Part shown: positions 60,368-61,224 of the stretch, in pieces
Position numbering within the stretch: position 1 is the first letter of the stretch
Layout of the letters: every line of letters begins with the position of its first letter
Assembly (NCBI RefSeq): GCF_006345805.1
Contig: NC_043007.1
Coordinates: 11,408,001 to 11,472,000, forward strand
DNA from: Octopus sinensis
Lineage: Eukaryota
DNA: 64,000 bases
Direction: 5' to 3'
Translations under genes and position numbers: made by a program
Notes under the pieces: model-generated
Databases searched by the model: none
Seen by the model: only the letters and a program-made list of their open reading frames with translations
What the model was told of the DNA's origin: nothing

Positions 60368-60436
60368 ATATACAGGGTGATTCGAAAGTTGCCTTACATA
60401 GGAACAATTTATCTTTTTATAAGAAACAGTTCTTAT

Positions 60437-60620
60437 ATCGCTTCTCGGCCTTTTGGCTAAGATCAAAGTGTAGTATCTCTTCTTATCAGCTTAATTTCTG
60501 ATACGGTCCCTATTTTGGGGCCACTAATATTAAACTGATTTTTAGAAAGAGGCGAAGTATCAGGGGCTTGCTCCACTTTTACCCTGGGTTGGCCTGGTAT
60601 TTGTATCACCCGGGAGATAC
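60437..60620 (+). pseudogene. U2: Retroposed near full-length U2 snRNA copy
   Basis: ATCGCTTCTCGGCCTTTTGGCTAAGATCAAAGTGTAGTA; stems IIa and IIb; Sm-like ATTTTTAG; altered loop IV; inside a MITE. Confidence 0.9.
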
Positions 60621-60623
60621 AAA

Positions 60624-60684
60624 AAAGGCAGTGCTCCAGCATGGCCACAGTCAAATGACTGAAACAACTAAAAGAGTAAAAGTG
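60624..60684 (+). mobile_element. SINE-A type 3' tail fused to U2
   Basis: AAAGGCAGTGCTCCAGCATGGCCACAGTCAAATGACTGAAAC...AAAAGAGTAAAAG. Confidence 0.85.
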
Positions 60685-61224
60685 TTTATAAGAATAGTTT
60701 TTTATTTATTTATTTAAAAAGCTCTATATGGTTACCATTGTTTTGAATACACATTGCAATACAGTTACCCCACTCATTGTGAACTCGCAATGGTACTTCT
60801 GGTGATACGTAAGCAAATGAGTTGTTGATGCGTTCCTTCAAATGATTTGTGTCTTTTATCTTTCTGTGATACACCATGCCTTTCAAATGCCCCCCAAAGA
60901 TAGAAATCAAGAGAGGTCAGATCAGGGTATCTAGTGGATCTTACAAACTGTTTCTTATAAAAAGATAAATTCTTCCTGTGTATGGAGACTTTTGAATTAC
61001 CCTGTATATACATATACATACACACACACACACACACACACCACTCATATATATAAGGAAAAGAATTTGAAATGCAGGAGTCTTTTAAAAGTATTTTTTA
61101 ACTTAACCAGTTTCACTGATTTAAAAAGATTTTCAAAAGTAAAGTGTGAGGCTTTGTGTATCCTTTGTGATGTCAACATCAAAATGAAAATCAAATGGAA
61201 ATTGTAGTTGTGATACTCATGCTA

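What the first reader, a model, noticed from the sequence alone, without database searches (positions are those of the whole stretch)
60416..60705. U2 snRNA fused to a SINE-A type tail within one TSD: chimera or seed of a U2-headed SINE
Seen: U2 from its first base (60437) to near its end, joined through an A-run microhomology to the last ~60 bp of SINE A, and flanked by an imperfect 21-bp repeat (TTTATAAGAAACAGTTCTTAT at 60416-60436; TTTATAAGAATAGTTTTTTAT at 60685-60705) inside a mariner MITE. Established: snRNA-LINE chimeras form by template switching, and snRNA-headed SINEs (SINEU) are known from crocodilians. Inference: a single template-switch product from a CR1/L2-type RT, or a member of a U2-derived SINE family.
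Basis: partly seen in the sequence, partly recalled or inferred. Interest (0 to 1): 0.7.

Follow-up and report, generated by a model that had tools for sequence, protein, structure and literature searches.

The report
U2 snRNA fused to SINE tail
A decayed copy of the U2 spliceosomal RNA was reverse-transcribed in one piece with the 60-base recognition tail of an abundant SINE and pasted into an older DNA transposon. This is the expected by-product of a LINE enzyme switching templates, and nothing here shows that it is a new mobile-element family.

Summary
Rfam finds one complete U2 snRNA at 60437-60627 (130.6 bits), the only curated RNA family in the window. It starts at U2 base 1. It is followed by three unassigned A's and then by the last ~61 bases of the window's abundant ~415-bp SINE (2-3 differences from the consensus). 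That tail is the strongly conserved module: two predicted hairpins plus octamer repeats, a CR1-like 3' end. The 248-bp unit is flanked by an imperfect 21-bp duplication. Both copies match the same stretch of the host element's other inverted repeat, so the target was truly duplicated. The host element belongs to the Tc1/mariner superfamily and is Tc1/Tc3-like rather than mariner proper. The U2 part is a pseudogene: four changes in the normally invariant first 68 bases and five broken stem pairs. That decay is similar to the tail's.

Best reading: one retroposition event in which a stringent LINE reverse transcriptase primed on a tail-bearing RNA and then jumped to U2. Stringent L2 and RTE LINEs are already known to make such chimeras with U6. 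I could not test single copy against family, because no host genome was reachable. A 2026 Octopus vulgaris annotation lists an undescribed 'SINE/U' class, which keeps the family reading open (~25%).

The parts
60368..60436 (.). Left arm of the host Tc1/mariner-superfamily MITE (left terminal inverted repeat 60368-60431), upstream of the insertion
   Evidence: 64-bp inverted repeat with 60946-61009, 89% identical. TA dinucleotides flank both ends.
60416..60436 (.). Left copy of the target-site duplication, TTTATAAGAAACAGTTCTTAT
   Evidence: Read. Its first 16 bases are identical to the right inverted repeat. Similarity to the right copy exceeds null expectation.
60437..60620 (+). U2 snRNA-derived part, from U2 base 1 to the end of stem-loop IV; a decayed pseudogene
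   Evidence: Rfam RF00004, 130.6 bits, model positions 1-192 aligned to 60437-60627. One inserted A and three substitutions fall in the conserved first 68 nt, and 5 stem pairs are flagged non-canonical. Four T runs of 4 or more start at 60451, 60513, 60539 and 60577.
60621..60623 (+). Three A's at the junction, assignable neither to U2 nor to the SINE (the SINE has T at the position matching 60623)
   Evidence: Alignment of the junction with 20 SINE A tails. The last Rfam model positions align here without identity.
60624..60684 (+). SINE A/LINE-type 3' tail module: predicted hairpin 1 (60627-60646), hairpin 2 (60648-60661), two octamer units (60668-60683) and a final G
   Evidence: 88-97% identical to about 20 SINE A 3' ends. 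The consensus tail folds at -17.7 kcal/mol, z=-3.6. No covariation support. Octamer copy number varies between 2 and 3 among copies.
60685..60705 (.). Right copy of the target-site duplication, TTTATAAGAATAGTTTTTTAT
   Evidence: Read. It aligns to the same stretch of the right inverted repeat with one gap and one mismatch.
60706..61009 (-). Rest of the host MITE: transposase C-terminal remnant on the minus strand (about 60713-60945, one frameshift) and right inverted repeat 60946-61009
   Evidence: ORFs listed. The 66-aa ORF has 35 relatives in the representative library (best E=1.3e-13). Some are named Tc3 or Tc1-like transposase. One relative gives a weak PDB hit to the Sleeping Beauty transposase.
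59955..60366 (+). Context: a near full-length SINE A copy abutting the MITE's left end. It is the reference for the tail and belongs to a separate insertion event.
   Evidence: BLAST and MAFFT alignment with 11 other copies. It is 3.6% diverged from the window consensus. A 9-bp repeat ATATACAGG lies on both sides.

Best explanation
This is a dead-on-arrival chimeric retrocopy made in a single target-primed reverse transcription event.

Proposed sequence of events:
1. A LINE reverse transcriptase of the stringent, CR1/L2-like kind recognises the 3' hairpin-plus-octamer tail. It nicked a Tc1-like MITE and began cDNA synthesis on a tail-bearing RNA, either a SINE A transcript or its LINE partner.
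2. After copying only the ~61-nt recognition module, it switched to the 3' end of a U2 snRNA. The three junction A's are either untemplated additions or an oligo(A) on U2.
3. It copied U2 to its first base.
4. Integration duplicated about 21 bp of target.

The copy has no promoter of its own and has since decayed at roughly the neutral rate.

Shown: the anatomy, the single duplication, the pseudogene state. Inferred: the template switch itself, the donor RNA, and the clade of the enzyme.
For: - U2 is complete from model position 1 and is followed directly by the tail in the same orientation.
- Homology to the SINE begins at AAAGGC, where the strongly conserved module shared by all diverged SINE A relatives begins, 3 nt upstream of predicted hairpin 1.
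- One duplication brackets the whole 248-bp unit, and both copies match the MITE's other inverted repeat.
- By inspection, no repeat brackets U2 or the tail alone.
- The same machinery can make long duplications. SINE A 26182-26593 has a 34-bp one.
- No other tail-only SINE A fragment occurs in the window, so a 61-bp truncation is unusual on its own.
- Decay is similar in both halves: 4 changes in 68 conserved U2 positions (~6%), and 2-3 in 60 tail positions (3-5%). SINE A copies are 2.3-13% from their consensus.
- Precedent: stringent L2 and RTE LINEs form U6 chimeras only by template switching (PMC4476161).
- A hairpin plus 8-bp microsatellite is the described CR1 recognition structure (PMC8665684).
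Against: - Only one copy could be examined, so a family with this exact junction is not excluded.
- The duplication is imperfect: about 4 mutational events in 21 bp. That is more than the 11% difference between the older inverted repeats would predict, though within small-number noise.
- Most SINE A copies in the window show no clear duplication.
- The LINE partner carrying this tail was not found in the window. None of the RT C-terminal fragments seen coincides with a BLAST match to the tail.
- The tail hairpins rest on thermodynamic prediction only; there is no covariation.
- In mammals, L1 template switching is largely restricted to U6 and U6atac.
Confidence: 0.6

Rival explanations
1. It is one copy of a propagating U2-headed retroposon family, SINEU-like but with a stringent CR1-like tail. 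Copies would share this junction and be transcribed from a master locus or from flanking promoters.
For: - The tail retained is exactly the conserved recognition module, which is what a functional non-autonomous element needs.
- SINEU shows that U1/U2-headed families can exist and can arise from a single template switch (PMC4494074).
- A 2026 Octopus vulgaris repeat annotation lists SINE class 'U' (1 family, 369,490 bp) and 'U-L1' (52,753 bp) without describing them (PMC13282606).
- Like many SINEU copies, this one sits in a Tc1/mariner-superfamily element in the orientation opposite to the transposase.
Against: - There is one copy in 64 kb, against about 20 SINE A copies.
- U2 genes use an external Pol II promoter, and the copy contains four T runs of 4 or more that would stop Pol III.
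- Head decay (~6%) is no greater than tail decay, so there is no sign of a long promoter-free family history.
- The 'U' class in O. vulgaris averages ~734 bp per recent insertion, longer than this 248-bp unit. It could be snRNA gene arrays or plain pseudogenes.
- It is not known that the window comes from that species.
Confidence: 0.25
2. The two RNAs were joined before reverse transcription. This could happen by RNA ligation, as RtcB does for U6/L1. It could also happen by read-through transcription from a U2 gene that had a truncated SINE tail inserted just downstream. The fused RNA was then retroposed through its tail.
For: - RNA ligation preceding retrotransposition is documented for U6/L1 (PMC6789731, listed).
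- A fused RNA carrying the tail would be a legitimate template for a stringent enzyme.
- The product would look identical to what is seen.
Against: - From general knowledge, the RtcB route depends on the 2',3'-cyclic phosphate end of U6, which mature U2 lacks.
- Read-through would normally carry U2 3'-flanking bases, but only three A's separate U2 from the tail.
- No such source locus is in the window.
Confidence: 0.1
3. Two independent insertions, or an artefact. Either a 5'-truncated SINE A and a U2 retropseudogene landed next to each other, or the juxtaposition is an assembly error and the flanking repeat is AT-rich chance similarity.
For: - The duplication is AT-rich and imperfect.
- With microsatellite-rich positions included, 3.1% of random position pairs in the window score as well.
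- A short A run follows U2, as in polyadenylated snRNA pseudogenes.
Against: - Both flanks are copies of the same MITE segment. That is not expected by chance or from a misassembly.
- A second insertion would have had to land exactly at the boundary of the first and leave no duplication of its own.
- Nulls that exclude microsatellites give 0.2-0.9%.
Confidence: 0.05

Closest known systems
snRNA/LINE chimeric retrocopies made by template switching: U6/L1 and related chimeras in mammals, and U6 chimeras of stringent L2 and RTE LINEs in vertebrates (Buzdin 2002/2003; Garcia-Perez 2007; Doucet 2015, PMC4476161)
   Same: A small nuclear RNA copy lies at the 5' side and a 5'-truncated retroelement 3' end at the 3' side. 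Both have the same orientation inside one target-site duplication. Stringent LINEs are reported to mobilise snRNA only in this chimeric form.
   Different: The snRNA here is U2, not U6; U2 chimeras are rare in mammals. The tail is a hairpin-plus-octamer module rather than a poly(A) tail. The donor may be a SINE rather than the LINE. The host appears to be a cephalopod, judged from the SINE sequence by memory and not verified.
SINEU of crocodilians (Kojima 2015, PMC4494074)
   Same: A U2-derived 5' part is joined to a non-snRNA 3' part. An origin by template switching is proposed. There is no internal promoter, and internal T runs are present. Copies are often found inside a mariner-type DNA transposon in the opposite orientation.
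   Different: SINEU are families of 10^2-10^4 copies with poly(A) tails. They are mobilised by target-specific Tx1 LINEs, and the heads are usually partial or rearranged. Here one copy is seen, with a complete U2 and a CR1-like tail shared with a dispersed SINE.
De novo SINE birth on CR1-type tails and the general 'common tail' model of SINE/LINE pairs (Ohshima and Okada; passerine SINE emergence, PMC5729268, seen by title and abstract only; CR1 3' structure, PMC8665684)
   Same: A small RNA is joined to the 3' recognition module (hairpin plus 8-bp microsatellite) of a stringent LINE. The module boundary coincides with the junction.
   Different: Successful SINEs carry a Pol III-promoter head (tRNA, 5S or 7SL). 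U2 has none, so this product is expected to be sterile.
Chimeric retrogenes of the Magnaporthe grisea MGL LINE (Gogvadze 2007, PMC2104539)
   Same: Direct fusions of cellular RNA copies to a LINE 3' end in a non-mammalian lineage. They are cited as evidence that template jumping is an old LINE property.
   Different: A fungal host, a different LINE clade, and a different partner RNA.

Membership tests
Template-switch snRNA/retroelement chimeric retrocopy | The 5' part is a copy of a small nuclear RNA beginning at its first base | tested here: met
   The Rfam U2 alignment starts at model position 1, which is 60437, immediately after the left duplication copy.
Template-switch snRNA/retroelement chimeric retrocopy | The 3' part is a 5'-truncated 3' end of a LINE or SINE in the same orientation | tested here: met
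   60624-60684 equals the last ~61 nt of SINE A on the + strand, 88-97% identical to about 20 copies.
Template-switch snRNA/retroelement chimeric retrocopy | One target-site duplication brackets the whole chimera, and none brackets either part alone | tested here: met
   An imperfect 21-bp duplication is present. Both copies match the same segment of the right inverted repeat. By inspection, no repeat flanks U2 alone.
Template-switch snRNA/retroelement chimeric retrocopy | An empty site in an orthologous or paralogous locus shows a single insertion | not testable with these tools
   The host genome could not be reached. No second copy of this MITE is in the window.
SINEU (snRNA-headed SINE) | Head derived from U1 or U2 snRNA | tested here: met
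SINEU (snRNA-headed SINE) | A repeated family: many copies sharing the same structure at different sites | tested here: inconclusive
   There is one copy in 64 kb. A genome-wide count was impossible. An undescribed 'SINE/U' class exists in an O. vulgaris annotation.
SINEU (snRNA-headed SINE) | 3' poly(A) tail and mobilisation by Tx1-type LINEs | tested here: not met
   The tail ends in octamer repeats (CTAAAAGA, GTAAAAGT), not poly(A), and is shared with a dispersed SINE.
SINE in the strict sense | Internal RNA polymerase III promoter in the head, and no internal terminator | tested here: not met
   The head is U2, which uses an external Pol II promoter. Four T runs of 4 or more lie inside the unit.
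Functional U2 snRNA gene | Conserved 5' half and intact stems | tested here: not met
   One inserted A and three substitutions fall in the first 68 nt. Five stem pairs are flagged non-canonical in the Rfam alignment.
Functional U2 snRNA gene | Upstream snRNA promoter (PSE) and downstream 3' box | not tested
   No model for these signals was available. The upstream sequence is the MITE inverted repeat and the downstream sequence is the SINE tail, so gene context is implausible.
CR1-like (stringent) LINE/SINE 3' end | 3' hairpin followed by a short (8-bp) microsatellite | tested here: met
   Two hairpins are predicted (-17.7 kcal/mol, z=-3.6). They are followed by 2-3 octamer units that vary in number among copies. 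This matches the CR1 description. Covariation is absent.
CR1-like (stringent) LINE/SINE 3' end | An autonomous LINE of that clade carrying the same tail | not testable with these tools
   No match to the tail falls at any of the RT C-terminal fragments of the window. The genome could not be searched.
Tc1/mariner-superfamily MITE (host element) | Terminal inverted repeats, TA target duplication, transposase-derived interior | tested here: met
   The element has 64-bp inverted repeats at 89% identity and TA flanks. Relatives of its C-terminal remnant are named Tc3 or Tc1-like, and one relative gives a weak PDB hit to the Sleeping Beauty transposase. Pfam found no hit.

The most novel reading that the evidence does not exclude
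The locus is a member of an uncharacterised cephalopod retroposon family with a complete U2 snRNA head and a CR1-like hairpin-plus-octamer tail. It might be the 'SINE/U' class that an Octopus vulgaris annotation lists without comment. That would be the first snRNA-headed SINE-like family outside crocodilians and the first on a stringent LINE tail. It would imply a master locus with an external snRNA promoter or transcription from flanking DNA.
Probability: 0.25. Interest if true: 0.6.

Novelty: new member of a known kind. Interest (0 to 1): 0.33.

Why it matters
Stringent LINEs recognise their own 3' tail and should not copy ordinary cellular RNAs. Chimeras like this one show the route by which they still do: prime on a tail-bearing RNA, then jump. 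The same step is the proposed origin of every SINE that shares a tail with its LINE.

This is a clean invertebrate example, with a complete U2, a junction at the edge of the recognition module, and a duplication verifiable from the host element's own symmetry. It extends to U2, and apparently to a cephalopod, what was documented for U6 in vertebrates. It also shows the minimal tail that the enzyme had copied before switching.

If further copies with the same junction exist, it would instead mark a second, independent origin of snRNA-headed retroposons. That would bear on how promoterless elements get transcribed. As a single decayed copy it has no expected cellular function.

Tried and rejected
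- **Junction scan.** I scanned metagenome contigs for the junction pattern and got 0 hits. A control scan for the SINE tail alone also gave 0 hits. The collection holds no DNA of this host, so the negative result says nothing about copy number.
- **Protein-level search for other copies.** I queried with the antisense ORF that spans the junction and found no candidates. Exact look-ups of two window ORFs returned nothing on record.
- **Classifying the host element and finding an uninterrupted paralogue.** Pfam on the ORFs and on a frameshift-merged translation found nothing. The word-indexed homologue search found nothing. The exhaustive representative search found 35 relatives at up to 56% identity, mostly short, from fish genomes and metagenome contigs. 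That is enough to place the superfamily but too distant for an empty-site comparison.
- **Orthologous-locus route.** I looked for a host exon in the window and saw only repeat- and microsatellite-derived ORFs.
- **SINE A head.** I tried to confirm a tRNA origin. ARAGORN found no tRNA and Rfam gave no tRNA hit on the head. The tRNA-like and CORE-like appearance therefore remains a judgement by eye.
- **Tail hairpins.** There are no compensatory changes and the score does not exceed the shuffles.
- **Functional U2 gene.** Rejected because of the changes at conserved positions and the context.
- **Sub-threshold Rfam miRNA hits.** Rejected because they lie on simple repeats.

Full report
**What is in the sequence**

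Reading 59900-61300 and scanning the whole window with Rfam shows a complete U2 spliceosomal RNA at 60437-60627 on the + strand. It scores 130.6 bits against a gathering score of 46 (E=2.8e-26) over model positions 1-192. It is the only family above its gathering score in the 64 kb. BLAST of the region against the window finds no second U2.

Bases 188-246 of the unit match the 3' ends of about 20 copies of a ~415-bp SINE ('SINE A') at 88-97% identity. One example is 59955-60366.

A MAFFT alignment of all these tails with the junction, and a tighter 42-column alignment, fix the start of homology. It begins at AAAGGC (60624). Everything upstream of that is U2 in the chimera and SINE body in the others.

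Three A's (60621-60623) lie between the last assignable U2 base (C at 60620, the end of stem-loop IV in the Rfam alignment) and the first SINE-homologous base. The SINE has a T where the chimera has the third A.

**The tail is a module**

Four diverged relatives of SINE A differ strongly from SINE A just upstream of AAGGC, yet they keep the following ~45 nt almost unchanged. These are the copies at 36423, 26044, 6261 and 12592.

The consensus tail folds into two hairpins, GGC.GUGC/GCAU.GCC and CAGUC/GACUG, followed by an unpaired A-rich stretch. The energy is -17.7 kcal/mol with z=-3.6 against shuffles. There are no compensatory changes and no excess over column shuffles, so the structure rests on thermodynamics and conservation only.

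The tail ends in 2-3 octamer units (GTAAAAGA) whose number varies between copies. A hairpin followed by an 8-bp microsatellite is the 3' structure described as the recognition site of CR1 reverse transcriptases (PMC8665684). I therefore call the tail CR1-like.

No LINE carrying this tail is in the window, so the clade is inferred. The chimera retains this module and nothing more of the SINE. It has both hairpins (60627-60646 and 60648-60661) and two octamers (60668-60683).

**One insertion, not two**

The 248-bp unit is bracketed by TTTATAAGAAACAGTTCTTAT (60416-60436) and TTTATAAGAATAGTTTTTTAT (60685-60705). Their local alignment score is 12. That score is reached by:
- 0.24% of non-microsatellite position pairs at the same spacing in this window;
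- 0.9% of shuffles of the two flanks;
- 3.1% of position pairs when the window's many microsatellites are included.

A stronger argument comes from the host element itself. It has 64-bp terminal inverted repeats (60368-60431 and 60946-61009, 89% identical). When either duplication copy is kept and the insert removed, the left arm aligns to the reverse complement of the right arm through TTTATAAGAAACAGTT. The left copy matches 16/16. The right copy matches with one gap and one mismatch. One segment of the element is therefore present twice, on either side of the insert, and this is what a target-site duplication is.

The comparison also suggests which copy mutated where. The left copy carries one substitution. 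The right copy carries about three small events. That is somewhat more than the 11% divergence of the older inverted repeats predicts, but the numbers are small.

By inspection, no repeat brackets U2 alone or the tail alone.

Among twelve full-length SINE A copies, one (26182-26593) has a 34-bp duplication with four mismatches. One has a 9-bp repeat. The rest have nothing clear. Long duplications are therefore possible but not typical for this machinery.

**State of the U2 part**

In the Rfam alignment the first 68 nt, which are almost invariant across animals, carry one inserted A and three substitutions. Five stem pairs are flagged as non-canonical. That is roughly 5-6% decay.

The tail differs from the window consensus at 2-3 of 60 positions, and one of those is polymorphic among SINE A copies. 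SINE A copies themselves are 2.3-13% from their consensus.

Both halves are therefore about as old as the bulk of SINE A. The head shows no extra divergence that would suggest a long history as a free-running family.

U2 genes are transcribed by Pol II from an upstream promoter (as discussed in PMC4494074). What lies upstream here is the MITE's inverted repeat. The unit also contains four T runs of 4 or more. It cannot be a Pol III SINE in the strict sense, and it is not a working U2 gene.

**The host element**

The minus strand between the inverted repeats carries a transposase C-terminal remnant in two frames. Pfam does not recognise it, and the word-indexed homologue search found nothing.

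The exhaustive representative search found 35 relatives (best E=1.3e-13, 56% identity). Those with names are 'Transposable element Tc3 transposase' and 'Transposase Tc1-like domain-containing protein' from fish. One of them gives a weak PDB hit to the catalytic domain of the Sleeping Beauty transposase (E=0.007).

With its TA flanks, the element is a ~373-bp Tc1/mariner-superfamily MITE of the Tc1/Tc3 kind.

**Mechanism**

The simplest account is a template switch during target-primed reverse transcription. The enzyme primes on an RNA that carries its recognition tail, copies the module, moves to the 3' end of a U2 snRNA and runs to base 1. The junction A's could be untemplated additions or an oligo(A) on U2.

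The arrangement of an snRNA copy followed by a 5'-truncated retroelement 3' end inside one duplication is the architecture of the known U6/L1 chimeras. Doucet et al. report that LINEs of the stringent L2 and RTE clades generate U6 pseudogenes only as such chimeras. They link this to the origin of SINE tails (PMC4476161). The present case fits that rule, with U2 in place of U6.

Two rivals give the same product and cannot be excluded from one locus:
- ligation of the two RNAs before reverse transcription, as documented for U6/L1 (PMC6789731);
- read-through from a U2 gene with a SINE tail just downstream.

Two independent insertions, or an artefact, are unlikely given the duplicated MITE segment.

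**One-off or family**

This could not be tested.
- The junction pattern gave no hit in the metagenome collection. Neither did the SINE tail alone, so the collection lacks this host.
- The protein-based routes returned nothing.
- No host exon is present to anchor an orthologue search.

The literature gives one lead. A 2026 repeat annotation of Octopus vulgaris lists a SINE class 'U' (one consensus, 369,490 bp; 19 recent insertions averaging ~734 bp) and a class 'U-L1' (52,753 bp). It does not discuss them (PMC13282606). These may be snRNA-headed retroposons, plain snRNA pseudogenes or gene arrays. It is also not established that the window is from that species. The octopus attribution rests on my recognition of the SINE and was not verified.

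SINEU of crocodilians (PMC4494074) shows that such families can exist and may start from a single template switch. They differ in having poly(A) tails, Tx1 partners and mostly partial heads. Many SINEU copies also lie inside a mariner-type element in the opposite orientation. That is noted as a coincidence, not as evidence.

I put the family reading at about 0.25.

**Verdict**

The thing is a chimeric retrocopy of a known kind: new for U2 on a stringent tail and, apparently, for cephalopods. It is mechanistically expected and probably inert.

Interest is modest (0.33). It would rise to about 0.6 if the same junction is found at many loci.

Noticed in passing
window 59955-60366 and 60368: A near full-length SINE A copy abuts the left end of the same Tc1-like MITE, with the 9-bp repeat ATATACAGG on both sides. 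This small (~373 bp) MITE has therefore been hit by two retroposon insertions in the same orientation.
   Followed up: partly
window 26182-26593: This SINE A copy has a 34-bp target-site duplication (TAACAAAGAAATTATTGTGTAATTCTTAACAATT against TAATAAAGAAAGTATTGTGCAATTCTTAACAATT). It also has about 14 extra bases between the duplication and the usual 5' end. Most other copies show no clear duplication.
   Followed up: partly
window 30089 (-), 53518 (+), 54475 (-): Further TACAGGGT-type transposon ends, each next to a (TA)n run. 53518-54482 may be another MITE of ~965 bp. A SINE A copy (30113-30508, minus strand) also ends right next to the one at 30089.
   Followed up: no
window 47111-47407 (-): An open frame reads ..PYSPDIAPLDFHLFRSLQNSL.., which by eye is the C-terminal part of a classical mariner transposase. 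It is distinct from the Tc1-like element that hosts the chimera.
   Followed up: no
window 62256-62660 (-), 11783-12016 (-), 25771-26016 (-), 46139-46702 (-): These look by eye like reverse-transcriptase C-terminal fragments of LINE-like or Penelope-like elements. None coincides with a BLAST match to the SINE A tail, and Pfam gave no hit for the 187-aa ORF at 46139-46702.
   Followed up: partly
window 76-336, 5285-5647, 32363-32572, 36976-37350 (-), 61292-61618 (-) and others: A second abundant repeat family, recognisable by the shared open frame HGLDGSTGVWEARRLHQAQSDLA...LDALPNANHSVS. One copy lies about 280 bp downstream of the MITE.
   Followed up: no
window 12544-12720 (-): A diverged relative of SINE A keeps the conserved tail but has a different segment just upstream of AAGGC. 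Next to it, at about 12880-13090, lies a long near-perfect palindrome.
   Followed up: no
whole window (e.g. 2977-3098, 21557-22053, 61521-61610): About 200 sub-threshold Rfam miRNA matches, all below gathering score, on TA/TG-type microsatellites and low-complexity DNA; I read them as artefacts of simple sequence. The long 'ORFs' at 13998-14652 and 33837-35340 are likewise translations of simple repeats.
   Followed up: yes
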